Below are positions 58,071 through 64,000 of a stretch of 64,000 nt of DNA, in pieces (positions within the stretch are counted from its first letter, which is position 1; every line of letters begins with the position of its first letter). The DNA comes from Rebecca billardiae RCC1528 (taxonomy: Eukaryota > Protista > Haptophyta): the NCBI GenBank assembly GCA_965240325.2, contig OZ251226.1, forward strand, positions 3,224,001 to 3,288,000. Reading direction: 5' to 3'. The position numbers and the translations under genes were made by a program. The notes under the pieces were generated by a model. It made no database searches. It saw only the letters and a program-made list of their open reading frames with translations, and had not been told where the DNA came from.

Positions 58071-60252
58071 ATGCCCGCTGCTGCCGAGCCCGACGTGATC
58101 GGCGCGCCGCTCGCGTTCGCCGAGGCCTTCTTCCAGGCGACGGTCGCGCATGACGCCGACAAGGTGGAGAGCGGCCAGGGCTGGGGCCTCCGCGAGGCGA
58201 TCGAGGGCGCGGTGCTGCGCGCGGGCGGGCTGGAGCGCGTGCCTGCGCTCGACACGACGCCGCTCGAGCAGCTGCGGCCGGGGACGCTGGTGCGCTTCCA
58301 GGGCATGGTGAAGGACATGTGGGATCCCGAGTTCTACATGGGCGTGTACGAGGAGATCGACCAGGCGACGGGCAAGCGGTGCGTGCGCCCACTCAGCGCG
58401 CGCGCGCGCGCGCGCCCCCCGCTCTTGTGCGCGCGCGCGCACGCGCTCCCCGCTGATCCCCGGTCCGCGCGCCCCCGTGCGCCGCCGCCTCCGCCGATCG
58501 CGCAGTACACTCAAGTCGGGCAAGTACTCTGACGCCGTGGATGGCCGCCCGGGCTGCGAGCTCGCGCCCGTGCGCAGCGCGCGCACCGGGCACGCATGCG
58601 TGCACATGCGCACCCCTCTGCTGGTGGTCCCGACGCCCGCCCTCACGCCCTGGGCGGCGGAGGCGCGCGCGAGCGCGACTTCGTCGGCGGTTGGCGCGCC
58701 CCAGGGCCTGCGCCCGTCCGACACGGCCGCCGCGCGCAAGCGTGGCGCCCCGGACGACGCCGACGCCGCGGTCGAGATGGCGACTGACGCGGCCGCTGCC
58801 GCCGCTGCTGCGACCGCCGGCGGCGCCGGCCCCACGGCCTCGATCGGCGAGGGCGTGGCGAAGCGCTCGGCGGGCGACGGGCGCGCGGCGGCGCCTTCCG
58901 AGCAGCCCGACGCAGGCACCGCCGCCGCCTTCCGCTACGGCTCGGCCGGCGCGTGGCGCTCCGCCATCGTGAAGCTGTACGACGGACACGGCGATGGCGC
59001 GGGCGGCGCGCGCGCGGGCGCGCCCGCGGCCGCCGGCGGCGCGGACGAGGAGGCTGCGCGCGGGCTGCGGCTGAACGACGTGGTCGAGTTTGTCGGCGTG
59101 CTCTCCCTCGAGTCGGACTTGCCCAACGACCTCGACGCGCTCGCCCTCGACGCGCTCGCCGACGACCCGCTCGCCCACCGCCCGCGCGGCACTGCGGTGC
59201 CGCGCGTGCACTGCGTGTCCTTCCGGCGCGAGCGCGGTCGCCCCAACGCGCTGCTGCCGCCGCACGACGCGGTGGCGGAGCGCGCGGCGGCGGTGGCGGC
59301 GGCGCGCGCGGCGGCGCCCGCGCTGCGCGAGGCCGCGCTCGACGTGCTCCGCGCCGCGCTCGGCGGCGACGCCCTCGCCGCCGAGTACGCGCTGCTCTGG
59401 GCGCTGTCGTCCGTGCACGCGCGCGTGGGCGCGCCCGGCGCGCTCACCGCCGTCGGCGCGCTGCCGCTCGCGCTGCAGGCGCCGAGCGCGGGCGGGGCGG
59501 GCGGCGCGCTCGGCGAGCCGCTCGCCGAGGCGCTCGGCGCGCTGCTCCCGCTCTTCAAGAAGCTCACCCTCGACGTGCCCTCCCTCAACGCCGCCGTGTA
59601 CGCCCCCGCGCGCGACGAGGCGTCCAACTGCCTCTGCGACGCGGCGCTGCAGCTGCCGGCCGGCACCGCGCTGCTCGCGGATGAGGGCGCGCTGCAGGGC
59701 GGGCAGCTGGGGGAGAAGGGCGTGGCGAACGTGCGCGCGCTCGCCGAGCTCGCCGCGCGGCAGAGCGTGCACTACGACTTCGGCGTGTACGCGCTGCCGT
59801 ACGACGCCGACGTGCCCGTCCTCCTCCTCTCGCGCGGCCGCTCGATCGTGCCGCCGCCGCCCGAGCAGCTGAGCGTGGCCGTCGCCCAGCTCGACGCGGC
59901 CGCGTGCGCGTGCGGCGTGCGCGAGGCGCTGGCGCGCGCGGAGGCGGGCGCGCCGGGCGGGCTGCGCGGCGTGCGCGCGTACCTCACGCTCGCCGCCGAC
60001 GAGCCCGCCGAGCTCGAGCCCGAGCTCGTCGAGGCGGCGCAGTCGGAGTTTGTGGCCGCGCGGCAGGCGGACCCGAGCGTGGGGGCGCACACGCTGCACG
60101 CGTGGTGCACGCTCGCGCGGCTGGTCGCGCGCTCCAGCCTGCGCGCGGTGGACGCGGAGCAGTGGGCCAAGATGCGCGCCCTCGAGGACGCCCGCGCCGC
60201 GCGCAGCGCCGCGCGCGACGCGCAGGCGCGCACGCCCGGCGTCGCCGTCTGA
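58071..60252 (+). CDS. MCMBP: Mini-chromosome maintenance complex-binding protein; intron 58379-58505
   Basis: [60 protein letters not shown]...[10 protein letters not shown]. Confidence 0.92.
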
Positions 60253-60571
60253 GAGGGCCGCGCCCCCGCACGGCCGCCGGCCGCTGCGGAGCGGCGGGCT
60301 CGTCGCGCGCGCGCTGCGTGCCGCGAGCCGCCCAAGCACTGGCCGGGCACACCGCCGGGCGCCCGGGCGACACGCTCCGGCGCCGCGGTCGCTGCTAGCT
60401 TCCCCAACGAGTGCACCCATGTGTGGCAAGCGCCGCGGCCAGAACCGTGGCGCGATTCTGAGCTGATGCGACCACGACGGTACCTGCTGCCCGCCCGCCG
60501 TGCCCGCCGTATTTCCATCGGCCGGCATGGCCGCGGGCCTGCGTCGACCAGCACCGGACTCTGGTACTGTA

Positions 60572-61817: not shown

Positions 61818-62834
61818 TCAGGCAGCAGCGGCAGCCTGTCGCTCGCGCACCGCGGCGAAGAAGATGGCGGGGACGGCCTCGCCGCGCGTCACGAGCTCGC
61901 CGGCCTCGTCGACGAGCACGCGCCAGCCCTCCGCGCGGGAGAAGTGGTGCGCGAGCTCGCCGCGCTCGAGGCGGCGCGACGGCTTGAACGGCGGCACCGC
62001 GTTCTCGCGCGCGCCCGGCGGCTCGGCAAAGGTGGCCCAGAGGAACACGCTGCCGCGCGCGCGCAGCACACGCGTGGCGAGCAGCGGCAGCAGCGGCTTG
62101 ACGAGGAAGCGGTGGCCGTGCACGAGGCGCACGTCGCCCGACTCCCAGCCCGCCGTCGCCGAGCCGTCGCGCGCGCGCAGGTCGCGATGCTCCGCGCGCA
62201 CGCGCACAGCCGCGCGCGCAGCGAGCGCCTCACACCGGCCAAGCGCGCCGCGGTGGTTGTCCACTCCGACCACCTCCCACGCGGGGCAGCCGCCGCCGCT
62301 GCGCTCGAGGGCGCGGGCAAGGTGGACGGCGTCGCGCCCGTTCCCCGTACCCAGGTCCAGCGCGCGCGCGCGTGCAGGCGGCGCCGCGCCCGCCCTCGCC
62401 GCCTCGGACGCCGCAGCGTCGAGCGCCTCAGCAAGGCGCGCGCGCAGGAACGTGTTGGCGCGCCACGACGGGGCGGACTCGCGCGAGCCGTGCGGCGCCT
62501 CGCGCCAGCCGGCGCGCGCGCACGCGCGCCACGAGGTCTCGTCGGACGAGTCGAGCGCGGTGCACACTGTCCAGCCGCGCTGCTCGAGCAGCTCGGCCGC
62601 CGCCCGCGCCTCGGCCGCGTCGGCGCCGACCACGGCGAGCTCATCCTCAGACGGCGCCGGCAGCTCAAACAGCCGCGGGGCGAGCTGGTCGAGCGGGATG
62701 GACGAGGCGCCCGCGAGGTGGCGGGCCGTGTACGCCGCGGGGGAGCGCACATCCACCAGGATCGTGCCTGTCGCGGGCGCGACAGGCACAGCAATCAAGC
62801 CCGGCGCGAGCAGCGCGCACATCGCGGCCGCCAT
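61818..62834 (-). CDS. Rhodanese-like domain + class I SAM methyltransferase (TehB-like)
   Basis: LVDVRSPAAYTARHLAGASSIP; ALDLGTGNGRDAVHLA; VVGVD; HRFL. Confidence 0.85.
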   Translation of the reverse strand: MAAAMCALLAPGLIAVPVAPATGTILVDVRSPAAYTARHLAGASSIPLDQLAPRLFELPAPSEDELAVVGADAAEARAAAELLEQRGWTVCTALDSSDETSWRACARAGWREAPHGSRESAPSWRANTFLRARLAEALDAAASEAARAGAAPPARARALDLGTGNGRDAVHLARALERSGGGCPAWEVVGVDNHRGALGRCEALAARAAVRVRAEHRDLRARDGSATAGWESGDVRLVHGHRFLVKPLLPLLATRVLRARGSVFLWATFAEPPGARENAVPPFKPSRRLERGELAHHFSRAEGWRVLVDEAGELVTRGEAVPAIFFAAVRERQAAAAA

Positions 62835-62944
62835 CGGGGCGCCGGCCGCTCTGAAAGTCTGAATTCCTGCACGAGCACGTCGCGCGGCCCTTTTCATCGG
62901 CTTTTCCTGGGCGCGGCCCGCCGCGGCATCAAGAAAGCGGCACG

Positions 62945-64000
62945 ATGGTTCCCAACGGCGGCATCTCGTCGCGACGCGAGCTCCCGCCCGCGCCGGTCCT
63001 CGACGGGCGGCCGGCGCGCGGGCGCAGCGGCGGCGGCGGGAGCGGACGCGGCCGGCCGAACTGGCTCTGCCTCATCTTCGGCGCGCAGGTGCTGCTCTTC
63101 GTCGCCGTGACGCTCGCGGCGTTCACCTTCTTCACCTCGCACTCGCTTGCGACCGCCGAGCTCGAGAAGGAGCTCGTGACGCTGCGCGCGGAGCGCGCGG
63201 CGCTGCAGGCGCAGCTGGACGGGCGCGTCGTCGCGAGCACCGCCGCCGCGCAGCCCGCGCCCGCCGCCGCCGCCGCCGCCGCCGCGCGCCCCGCGTCGAG
63301 CACTCTCGCGGCGGCCGCGCTGCCTCCGCCGCTCTCCGAGTCTGCGCTGCGGCTCGCGCTGAACGGCGAGTGCGCGGAGGTGCGCGAGGGGTGGTGGGTG
63401 TACGAGCTGTGCTTCTTCCACTCCGTCCGCCAGTTCCACCCGGCCGACGCGCACGGCCGCTTCGACGAGTACTCGCTCGGCCGCTTCCACTCGGCGGAGC
63501 CGCCCACGCGCCAGCTGTACGCGGGCGGCGACAAGTGCGGCTCGAGGACGCGCGAGACGCGCGTGGCGCTGGAGTGCGGCGCGGCGGGCGAGGGGCCGCG
63601 CATCCTCAAGATCGAGGAGGTGCGCACGTGCGAGTACATCGCGCGCGTCGCCACGCACGCCGCGTGCGCGCCGGGCGAGAAGCCGGCGCCGCTGCCAGAG
63701 CCGGCGCCAAGCGCGGCCGCCGACGCCAAGCCGGCCGCGGCGGCGGCGGCGGCGGCGGCGGTGTCGACGCTGCCCGACCGCGGGCGCGGCGTGGCCCCGG
63801 GCGTGGCGATCACGCCCGCGCCCCCCGTGCGCGGCGGCACCTCCACCGGCCCCACGCCGCCGCCCTCCCGGTACGCGCACCTCCCGAGCTCGGGCGCGGC
63901 TGCGCTCGGCGAGAAGGCGGCCGCGGTCGTGGAGGCGTTCACGCACTCGTGGGGGGCGTACCGGGCGCACGCGTGGGGGAAGGACGAGTACCAGCCGCTC
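62945..64000 (+). CDS. Type II membrane protein: TM + coiled coil + MRH (OS-9/PRKCSH-like) domain + start of GH47 alpha-1,2-mannosidase; truncated by window edge
   Basis: Manual translation, open for 352 codons: WLCLIFGAQVLLFVAVTLAAFTFF; CAEVREGWWVYELCFFHSVRQFH...YAGGDKC...RETRVALEC...IEEVRTCEYIARV; VVEAFTHSWGAYRAHAWGKDEYQPL. Confidence 0.85.
   Translation, partial: MVPNGGISSRRELPPAPVLDGRPARGRSGGGGSGRGRPNWLCLIFGAQVLLFVAVTLAAFTFFTSHSLATAELEKELVTLRAERAALQAQLDGRVVASTAAAQPAPAAAAAAAARPASSTLAAAALPPPLSESALRLALNGECAEVREGWWVYELCFFHSVRQFHPADAHGRFDEYSLGRFHSAEPPTRQLYAGGDKCGSRTRETRVALECGAAGEGPRILKIEEVRTCEYIARVATHAACAPGEKPAPLPEPAPSAAADAKPAAAAAAAAAVSTLPDRGRGVAPGVAITPAPPVRGGTSTGPTPPPSRYAHLPSSGAAALGEKAAAVVEAFTHSWGAYRAHAWGKDEYQPL

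What the first reader, a model, noticed from the sequence alone, without database searches (positions are those of the whole stretch)
62945..64000. MRH lectin domain fused upstream of a GH47 alpha-1,2-mannosidase (missed by the ORF track)
Seen: one open frame with a TM anchor, coiled coil, a six-Cys MRH-like domain (~63371-63667) containing GWWVY and Q/R/E/Y residues (VRQFH, RETRV, IEEV, CEY), a Pro/Ala linker, then the GH47 N-terminal signature AFxHSWxxYxxxAWGxDExxP. Established: in yeast, animals and plants the GH47 mannosidases that trim N-glycans and the OS-9/Yos9 MRH lectins that read the trimmed glycan (using a WW motif) are separate ERAD proteins. Inference: a trimmer and reader fused in one chain, or a lectin-tethered mannosidase. 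Only ~25 residues of the GH47 part are visible.
Basis: partly seen in the sequence, partly recalled or inferred. Interest (0 to 1): 0.75.

Follow-up and report, generated by a model that had tools for sequence, protein, structure and literature searches.

The report
Lectin-carrying N-glycan mannosidase gene
The window ends inside a real gene for a membrane-anchored enzyme that trims mannose from protein-linked sugars and carries, in the same chain, a sugar-reading domain of the kind that other organisms keep on separate quality-control proteins; the same fusion occurs in many unnamed environmental eukaryote sequences, and I found no paper that describes it.

Summary
An open frame starts at ATG 62945 and runs to the window end (352 aa). 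In order, it encodes:
- an Arg-rich tail
- one membrane helix (aa 41-64)
- a helical stem
- an MRH lectin domain (aa 138-244; Pfam PRKCSH E 4.5e-11; AF2 pLDDT 94.5; fold matches GNPTG, OS-9, XTP3-B and GIIbeta)
- an ~80-aa Pro/Ala linker
- the first ~30 residues of a GH47 class I alpha-1,2-mannosidase

The MRH keeps six Cys, the OS-9-type WW pair and the Gln/Arg/Glu/Tyr sugar-binding set.

The rest of the GH47 domain lies beyond the window and could not be read. Relatives show what follows:
- The two closest (45-49% identity) have the same layout, end exon 1 fifteen codons further on at a GT donor, and one continues with colinear GH47 exons.
- Eleven more distant members encode tail-TM-stem-MRH-linker plus a complete GH47 in one frame, with the catalytic residues intact.

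The family occurs only in unnamed metagenome or read-assembly data, labelled "hypothetical" or "mannosidase". I found no paper on it.

Most likely it is a type II ER/Golgi mannosidase whose stem lectin captures mannose glycans for, or after, trimming. Sugar binding and activity are untested.

Verdict: a new variant of known kinds, of moderate interest.

The parts
62945..64000 (+). First exon, cut by the window end, of the MRH-GH47 mannosidase gene (codons 1-352)
   Evidence: Open frame from the first ATG after an in-frame stop. The N-terminus is alignable to relatives P0001 and P0002.
62945..63064 (+). Arg-rich cytosolic tail, aa 1-40
   Evidence: Seven Arg precede the hydrophobic segment. The orientation is inferred from the positive-inside rule.
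63065..63136 (+). Single transmembrane helix, aa 41-64 (signal anchor)
   Evidence: Kyte-Doolittle maximum of 2.46. The motif NWL...AQ(V/M)..F..F...FFT is conserved in all clades of the family.
63146..63223 (+). Helical, coiled-coil-like stem, aa 68-93
   Evidence: Heptad-like ELEKELVTLRAERAALQAQL. Relatives carry ELHRLRxEN at the same place. No coiled-coil predictor was run.
63356..63676 (+). MRH (mannose-6-phosphate receptor homology) lectin domain, aa 138-244. It has six Cys, W150/W151, Q163, R203, E225 and Y231.
   Evidence: Pfam PRKCSH 4.5e-11. OS-9 alignment. AF2 pLDDT 94.5. Foldseek matches 7s69 and 3aih at probability 1.00. Q, R, E, Y and the Cys are invariant in 18 fusion proteins.
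63677..63907 (+). Pro/Ala-rich flexible linker, aa 245-321, ending in the conserved PPSRYAxLP motif
   Evidence: Composition seen. The motif is conserved with P0001 and P0002.
63908..64000 (+). Start of the GH47 class I alpha-1,2-mannosidase domain, aa 322-352
   Evidence: Pfam Glyco_hydro_47 profile 1-22, E 0.002. The stretch is near-identical to the GH47 start of P0001 and P0002. In those relatives the exon runs on for 15 more codons.

Best explanation
The gene encodes a type II membrane protein of the early secretory pathway. A short cytosolic tail and one membrane helix are followed, on the lumenal side, by a helical stem, an MRH lectin domain, a long flexible Pro/Ala tether and a GH47 class I alpha-1,2-mannosidase domain.

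The mannosidase removes alpha-1,2-linked mannoses from high-mannose N-glycans. The MRH domain is of the OS-9/XTP3-B type: it has the WW pair and a complete Gln/Arg/Glu/Tyr pocket. I infer that it binds mannose glycans on the same or a neighbouring glycoprotein and so keeps the substrate or product at the enzyme. This would be the cis version of what the MRH subunit does in trans for glucosidase II, and of what GNPTG is reported to do for GlcNAc-1-phosphotransferase.

Shown: the reading frame, the topology signals, the MRH fold and binding residues, the junction to GH47, and a conserved family with a complete, catalytically intact GH47.

Inferred: that the rest of this particular gene is intact, that the MRH binds mannose, which glycan it prefers, and whether the protein sits in the ER or the Golgi.

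My confidence in the architecture is about 0.9. My confidence in the lectin-assisted-trimming mechanism is about 0.5.
For: - The frame and domains are in the window.
- The MRH model has pLDDT 94.5 and matches GNPTG, OS-9, XTP3-B and GIIbeta MRH structures.
- The family profile is closest to XTP3-B (6e-35) and OS-9 (2e-21). It is further from Yos9, GNPTG and GIIbeta.
- Q, R, E, Y and the six Cys are invariant in 18 fusion proteins and in 61 MRH domains.
- Eleven full-length members have the MRH about 200 aa upstream of a complete GH47.
- P0153's GH47 is closest to human ER mannosidase I (392 bits) and Golgi mannosidase IA (356 bits). It keeps the equivalents of E330, D463, E599 and T688.
- The catalytic motifs FFETTIR, GDS(Y/F)YEY, LLRPE and NTEAHP are each kept wherever that part of the domain is present, in all family members. 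The exon-like pieces of the close relative L001 show the first three; its contig ends before the fourth.
- In L001 and L002, exon 1 ends at GTGAGT or GTAAGC 15 codons past the point where the window stops. L001 continues with colinear GH47 pieces.
- The MRH domains of the fusion proteins form one group (SH-aLRT 95), which fits a single origin.
- The GIIbeta MRH aids glucose trimming, and OS-9 reads the trimmed D3 branch (PMC6272264).
Against: - Only about 30 residues of the GH47 part of this gene are visible. Its Pfam score is below the cutoff, and a truncated or broken downstream part cannot be excluded.
- No transcript evidence exists, because no sequencing run was listed.
- Nothing shows that the MRH binds sugar, nor which sugar.
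- The long flexible linker gives no structural clue to cooperation between the two domains.
Confidence: 0.6

Rival explanations
1. Trim-and-read ERAD module. The mannosidase removes the D3-branch alpha-1,2 mannose. [quoted passage not shown] One chain would then do the work of EDEM/Htm1 plus OS-9/Yos9.
For: - The MRH is nearest to the ERAD lectins XTP3-B and OS-9 and keeps the WW pair.
- All family GH47 domains have Met where ER mannosidase I has Arg461. From my own knowledge of the yeast R273L work, loss of that Arg widens trimming beyond Man8B, so the enzyme could make the OS-9 ligand.
- The membrane helix is unusually conserved, which could reflect docking to a membrane complex.
- OS-9 reads Man-alpha1,6-Man-alpha1,6-Man on the trimmed D3 branch (PMC6272264).
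Against: - No specificity data exist.
- The GH47 is of the ManI type, not the EDEM type.
- No link to HRD1 or SEL1L is shown.
Confidence: 0.2
2. Localisation or assembly device. The MRH domain binds N-glycans of resident partner glycoproteins, as OS-9 is thought to do with SEL1L, or of the enzyme itself. It would serve only to retain or cluster the mannosidase in a compartment and take no part in substrate handling.
For: - OS-9 is presumed to be tethered to SEL1L through SEL1L's glycans (PMC6272264).
- The helical stem and membrane helix are conserved, which suggests oligomerisation or partner binding.
Against: - An intact sugar pocket is conserved right next to a glycan-processing domain across clades that share only about 30% identity in the MRH. 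That is explained more simply by substrate or product binding.
- No partner is known.
Confidence: 0.1
3. The GH47 part of this particular gene is absent, degenerate or belongs to a separate downstream gene. On this reading the window gene encodes only a membrane-anchored MRH lectin with a vestigial GH47 N-terminal motif.
For: - Only 22 profile positions of GH47 are visible and they score below the Pfam cutoff.
- Some collection members are MRH-only products (P0017, P0009, P0157).
Against: - Those MRH-only products are short pieces that group with GH47-bearing members.
- The GH47 start in the window is strongly conserved with P0001 and P0002.
- Every longer relative carries the rest of the domain.
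Confidence: 0.07

Closest known systems
ER alpha-1,2-mannosidase I (MAN1B1 / yeast Mns1 / plant MNS3) and Golgi alpha-mannosidase IA (GH47 class I)
   Same: - Type II membrane topology with the catalytic domain at the C-terminus.
- The family's GH47 domain matches human ER ManI at E 3e-116 and mouse Golgi ManIA at E 2e-105, with the catalytic Glu/Asp/Glu and the Ca-binding Thr conserved.
- The window's GH47 start carries the ManI-type signature.
   Different: - The known enzymes have an unstructured stem with no lectin. Here the stem holds a helical segment and an MRH domain.
- The Arg461 specificity position of ER ManI is Met in all family members.
OS-9 / XTP3-B (ERLEC1) / Yos9 ERAD lectins
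   Same: - MRH fold, six Cys, the WW pair and the Gln/Arg/Glu/Tyr pocket.
- They are the closest solved relatives by family profile.
   Different: - Those are soluble lumenal proteins without an enzyme domain, and they bind SEL1L/Hrd3.
- This protein is membrane-anchored and fused to a glycosidase.
- It is not an orthologue. The MRH domains of the fusion proteins form their own group.
Glucosidase II (GH31 alpha subunit plus MRH-bearing beta subunit, PRKCSH)
   Same: The principle is the same: an MRH lectin serves an N-glycan-trimming glycosidase. The GIIbeta MRH binds the D3-branch mannobiose and is needed for efficient glucose trimming (PMC6272264).
   Different: - In glucosidase II the lectin and the enzyme are separate chains, the enzyme is GH31 rather than GH47, and GIIbeta has G2B and EF-hand parts.
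- No PF12999 hit is found here.
- The GIIbeta MRH is a more distant match than OS-9.
GNPTG, gamma subunit of GlcNAc-1-phosphotransferase
   Same: - It is the best end-to-end single-sequence and Foldseek match to the window's MRH (7s69).
- From my own knowledge, its MRH also presents high-mannose glycans to a glycan-modifying enzyme.
   Different: - GNPTG is a soluble subunit, lacks the WW pair, and serves a transferase.
- By family profile it ranks below OS-9 and XTP3-B.
EDEM3 (GH47 plus PA domain) and the Mnl1/Htm1-PDI complex
   Same: These are GH47 proteins that gain substrate selection through an added domain or partner.
   Different: The added module there is a PA domain or a PDI and recognises protein. 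The GH47 is of the EDEM subgroup. Here the added module is a glycan lectin on a ManI-type GH47.

Membership tests
MRH / P-type lectin domain (Pfam PF07915 PRKCSH) | Profile match above the curated cutoff | tested here: met
   43.9 bits against a cutoff of 27, E 4.5e-11. PRKCSH_1 scores 36.4 against 23.
MRH / P-type lectin domain (Pfam PF07915 PRKCSH) | Six conserved Cys (three disulfides) and the flattened beta-barrel fold | tested here: met
   C143, C156, C198, C211, C229 and C241 are invariant in 18 relatives. The AF2 model has pLDDT 94.5 and eight strands. Foldseek matches 7s69 and 3aih at TM 0.72-0.78 and probability 1.00.
MRH / P-type lectin domain (Pfam PF07915 PRKCSH) | Gln, Arg, Glu, Tyr mannose-binding residues | tested here: met
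   Q163, R203, E225 and Y231 align to OS-9 Q130, R188, E212 and Y218. They are invariant in 61 MRH domains.
MRH / P-type lectin domain (Pfam PF07915 PRKCSH) | Actual binding of mannose-type glycans | not testable with these tools
   Needs a glycan array or frontal affinity chromatography.
OS-9 / XTP3-B / Yos9 ERAD lectins | WW pair ahead of the Gln, and closest sequence kinship | tested here: met
   W150/W151 align to OS-9 W117/W118. The family profile hits XTP3-B at 6e-35 and OS-9 at 2e-21, ahead of GNPTG and GIIbeta.
OS-9 / XTP3-B / Yos9 ERAD lectins | Soluble lumenal lectin without an enzyme domain, orthologous to OS-9 | tested here: not met
   It has a signal anchor at aa 41-64 and a fused GH47. 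The fusion MRH domains form a separate group.
GH47 class I alpha-1,2-mannosidase (Pfam PF01532) | Profile match above the curated cutoff in this gene | tested here: inconclusive
   17.6 bits against 22.9, because only profile positions 1-22 lie inside the window. Relatives score up to 491 bits over 1-455.
GH47 class I alpha-1,2-mannosidase (Pfam PF01532) | Catalytic Glu, Asp, Glu and the Ca-binding Thr (human E330, D463, E599, T688) | not testable with these tools
   These residues lie beyond base 64000. They are all present wherever that part of the domain is present in the family. In L001, the closest relative with exons, the Glu, Asp and Glu sites are present and the contig ends before the Thr site.
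GH47 class I alpha-1,2-mannosidase (Pfam PF01532) | Type II membrane topology with a C-terminal catalytic domain | tested here: met
   Arg-rich tail, single helix at aa 41-64, domains downstream.
EDEM / Htm1 subgroup of GH47 | Closest kinship to EDEM-type rather than ManI-type GH47 | tested here: not met
   P0153's GH47 best matches ER ManI and Golgi ManIA. No EDEM/Htm1 chain scored at E <= 1e-20. This was tested on a relative, not on the window gene.
Glucosidase II beta subunit (PRKCSH) | N-terminal G2B/LDLa-like part (PF12999) with a C-terminal MRH | tested here: not met
   No PF12999 hit. The MRH sits between a membrane stem and GH47.

The most novel reading that the evidence does not exclude
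In haptophytes and other marine protists, one membrane protein both writes and reads the N-glycan degradation signal. A ManI-type mannosidase with relaxed branch specificity (Met in place of Arg461) exposes the alpha-1,6 mannose. Its own OS-9-type MRH holds that product. The conserved membrane helix couples the complex to the retrotranslocon. This would be a self-contained glycan timer that shortcuts the EDEM-to-OS-9 hand-off known from yeast, animals and plants.
Probability: 0.2. Interest if true: 0.75.

Novelty: new variant of a known kind. Interest (0 to 1): 0.55.

Why it matters
In yeast, animals and plants, glycan trimming by GH47 mannosidases and glycan reading by MRH lectins are done by separate proteins. 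How the trimmed glycoprotein passes from one to the other is still debated. A natural single-chain fusion is genetic evidence that the two activities act on the same molecules at the same place.

It also offers a compact protein in which cooperation between lectin and enzyme can be measured directly, by comparing activity with and without the MRH or with pocket mutants.

Finally, it extends a principle already known from glucosidase II and GlcNAc-1-phosphotransferase, an MRH lectin serving a glycan-processing enzyme, to the mannosidase step. It also flags a whole protist protein family that automatic annotation currently labels only as 'mannosidase' or 'hypothetical'.

Tried and rejected
1. 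Word-index protein search with the 352-aa product, and again restricted to the MRH region, gave nothing. The length window of 194-616 aa excludes full-length relatives, and Ala-rich words swamp the candidate list. These blanks are not evidence of absence.

2. The ESM Atlas feature search with the window product gave no usable hit. With P0153 it returned only plain GH47 clusters. The Atlas shape search with the MRH model returned only MRH-only or GIIbeta clusters. So no cluster of 50 or more members shows the fusion.

3. The look-up of sequencing runs listed no run, so read laying was not used and no transcript evidence could be obtained.

4. A JGI metagenome scan with the clade alignment found only distant MRH proteins, at most 31% identity. 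The rest of this gene could not be fetched.

5. A viral contig scan found nothing, so there is no sign of a giant-virus origin.

6. No synteny: the window's upstream neighbour has no match in the relatives' loci.

7. Rejected: the long ORFs on the opposite strand and in other frames are GC-rich artefacts with no family hit.

8. Rejected: GNPTG or GIIbeta orthology, on architecture and profile ranking.

9. Spliced models of the relatives were not joined.

10. The careful tree search did not finish in 300 s, so only the quick tree is reported.

11. The organism was not identified by me. Other agents of this scan call it a GC-rich haptophyte.

Full report
**What is in the sequence**

An ATG at 62945 is the first one after an in-frame stop 31 codons upstream. 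It opens a frame that runs without a stop to the last base of the window, 352 codons. The window is 57-79% G+C, so long open frames occur on every strand. The overlapping frames on the other strand and in other phases have no family match, whereas this frame does.

From the N-terminus, the product has these parts:
- An Arg-rich tail of 40 residues.
- One strongly hydrophobic segment at aa 41-64. Its Kyte-Doolittle mean is 2.46 and seven Arg precede it, the pattern of a type II signal anchor.
- A helical, heptad-like stretch at aa 68-93. This was judged by eye; no predictor was run.
- An Ala/Pro spacer.
- An MRH domain at aa 138-244.
- A Pro/Ala linker of about 80 residues.
- The opening of a GH47 domain at aa 322-352.

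**The MRH domain is real and looks functional**

Sequence evidence:
- Pfam PRKCSH matches at E 4.5e-11 (43.9 bits, cutoff 27). PRKCSH_1 matches at 5.3e-9.
- Against solved structures, the single sequence matches CI-MPR repeats, XTP3-B, GNPTG, OS-9, GIIbeta and Yos9.
- In the alignment to human OS-9 (3aih), the window residues W150/W151, Q163, R203, E225 and Y231 fall on OS-9 W117/W118, Q130, R188, E212 and Y218. I obtained the OS-9 numbers by counting along the chain. That these are the WW motif and the sugar-binding residues is my own knowledge of the OS-9 structure paper.
- The six Cys are C143, C156, C198, C211, C229 and C241.

Structure evidence:
- An AlphaFold2 model of aa 130-250, built on 61 aligned MRH domains, has mean pLDDT 94.5 and eight strands.
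- Foldseek places it on GNPTG (7s69), OS-9 (3aih), XTP3-B and the GIIbeta MRH at probability 1.00, with TM up to 0.78 by target.

**The GH47 part**

Only profile positions 1-22 of 455 fit inside the window. The score is E 0.002 and 17.6 bits, below the 22.9 cutoff for that reason alone. The visible signature is of the ManI type.

The remainder of the gene could not be obtained:
- No sequencing run was listed.
- The organism's own protein is not in the big protein library, where no hit scored below 1e-30.
- A JGI metagenome scan found only distant MRH proteins.

**Relatives settle the architecture**

An exhaustive phmmer search with aa 130-352 found 608 proteins at E <= 1e-3. Eight of the best 150 cluster representatives carry both an MRH and a GH47 segment. 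A word search seeded with one of them added eight more clusters with both Pfam families.

Eleven members are full length (756-886 aa): P0153, P0160, P0172, P0201, P0170, P0161, P0182, P0192, P0197, P0188 and P0163. In all of them the MRH sits about 200 residues upstream of a complete GH47 domain in one frame.

All of them share the window protein's layout. This includes a strikingly conserved membrane helix (NWL...AQ(V/M)..F..F...FFT) followed by an ELHRLRxEN-type helix.

In an alignment of 18 fusion proteins, the six Cys, the second Trp, Gln, Arg, Glu and Tyr are invariant.

In a quick maximum-likelihood tree of 61 MRH domains, the window and the 14 other rows I had labelled as fusions fall in one group with SH-aLRT 95. 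Thirteen of those 14 have a detected GH47 segment; P0017 was labelled by assumption and has none. Two further short fragments, P0009 and P0157, also lie in the group, next to a fusion member. This fits a single origin. The careful search did not finish. The domain is short and many branches are long, so this is supportive rather than decisive.

**The two closest relatives**

P0001 and P0002 are 45% and 49% identical to the query in the library search and 47% and 44% in the clade alignment. They align with the window product from the tail to its last residue, including a PPSRYAxLP motif just before the GH47 start.

In their contigs (L002, L001), the frame continues for 15 more codons after the codon that matches the window's last one. 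It then meets GTAAGC or GTGAGT, a canonical splice donor.

L001 then holds four further exon-like pieces on the same strand. They match GH47 profile positions 44-136, 149-227, 271-323 and 354-397 in order, up to the contig end.

By inference, the window stops about 45 nt before the end of exon 1 of a multi-exon gene.

**Kind of mannosidase**

The GH47 domain of P0153 is closest to human ER mannosidase I (1fo2/1x9d, 392 bits). Mouse Golgi mannosidase IA follows at 356 bits, with yeast Mns1 and the fungal enzymes far behind. No EDEM-type chain appears.

Counting along the 1fo2 alignment, the equivalents of E330, D463, E599, E663 and T688 are conserved. The motifs FFETTIR, GDS(Y/F)YEY, LLRPE and NTEAHP are each present wherever that part of the domain is present, in every family member. 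The L001 pieces show the first three; that contig ends before the fourth.

The position of Arg461 is Met in all members. From my own knowledge, this is the residue whose replacement by Leu lets the yeast enzyme trim beyond Man8B. That suggests, but does not show, Golgi-type broad alpha-1,2 trimming.

**Kind of lectin**

With a profile of the 18 fusion MRH domains, the solved structures rank as follows:

| Solved structure | E-value |
|---|---|
| XTP3-B | 6e-35 |
| OS-9 | 2e-21 |
| Yos9 | 9e-14 |
| GNPTG | 7e-13 |
| GIIbeta | 6e-11 |

CI-MPR chains, with their many repeats, also score between these; they are not listed.

The domain is therefore nearest to the ERAD lectins and shares their WW pair. 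A review (PMC6272264) records three relevant points:
- OS-9 reads Man-alpha1,6-Man-alpha1,6-Man on the trimmed D3 branch.
- The GIIbeta MRH binds the untrimmed D3 mannobiose and is needed for efficient glucose trimming.
- OS-9 may dock to SEL1L through glycans.

**How it most likely works**

I commit to a lectin-assisted mannosidase. This is a type II ER/Golgi enzyme whose stem lectin, on a flexible tether and probably in an oligomer, holds mannose glycans of the client at the catalytic domain.

Rival readings:
- The lectin holds the product for ERAD hand-off, the trim-and-read model. It is favoured by the OS-9-type features and by the Met at the Arg461 site.
- The lectin only localises the enzyme.

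The sequence data do not decide between them. Binding and activity assays would.

**Novelty**

Seven full-text searches on this question found no paper describing an MRH-GH47 fusion. One of them returned a diatom pathway table that lists the two Pfam families on separate genes.

The family's members come only from ENA, JGI, Tara and Logan assemblies and one NCBI WGS record. They are labelled 'hypothetical protein' or 'mannosyl-oligosaccharide alpha-1,2-mannosidase'. No ESM Atlas cluster of 50 or more members showed the pair of domains.

The architecture is therefore present in public data but, as far as I could find, unnamed and undescribed. I could not query InterPro or named proteomes, so a named example may exist.

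Other agents of this scan describe the genome as a GC-rich haptophyte and note a separate OS-9-like gene elsewhere in it. I did not test either claim.

**Verdict**

It is a new variant of known kinds, of moderate interest. The main gaps are the unseen remainder of this gene, the lack of transcript data, and the untested sugar specificity.

Noticed in passing
window 61818-62897 (-): The upstream neighbour lies head-to-head. It is a 359-aa ORF with a rhodanese-like domain (aa 45-113) followed by a SAM methyltransferase domain (aa 178-245). Its ATG lies only 47 bp from the ATG of the MRH-GH47 gene, so the two genes must share a very short bidirectional control region.
   Followed up: partly
L006:3864-7122 and the matching parts of L007-L011: A marine member of the family (P0185, the identical 765-aa protein on 23 or more contigs) sits in a block of about 3.2 kb that is 98-99.6% identical between contigs. 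The DNA further upstream is unrelated between contigs and has different neighbour genes. Possible causes are dispersed copies, assembly chimeras or a mobile cassette. No viral relative was found.
   Followed up: partly
window 63065-63136 and relatives: The membrane helix of the family is conserved in sequence (NWL...AQ(V/M)..F..F...FFT) across clades that share only about 30% identity in the MRH domain. This is unusual for a mere anchor and hints at a partner or oligomer contact within the membrane.
   Followed up: no
window 58393-60528 (-): A 711-aa ATG ORF in a 78% G+C stretch has no Pfam match. It may be a GC artefact or a low-complexity protein.
   Followed up: no
P0158 / P0166 (ENA): These family members have an insertion of about 125 residues in the middle of the GH47 domain. 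The GH47 matches are split at about 676 and 801. This is most likely an intron read through by prokaryote-style gene calling.
   Followed up: no
bioRxiv 10.64898/2026.10.22.760878: A survey reports GNPTG outside animals only in two protists and suspects false positives. MRH domains like the one here hit GNPTG as their best single-sequence structure match. Such 'GNPTG' calls in protists may therefore be MRH domains of other proteins.
   Followed up: no
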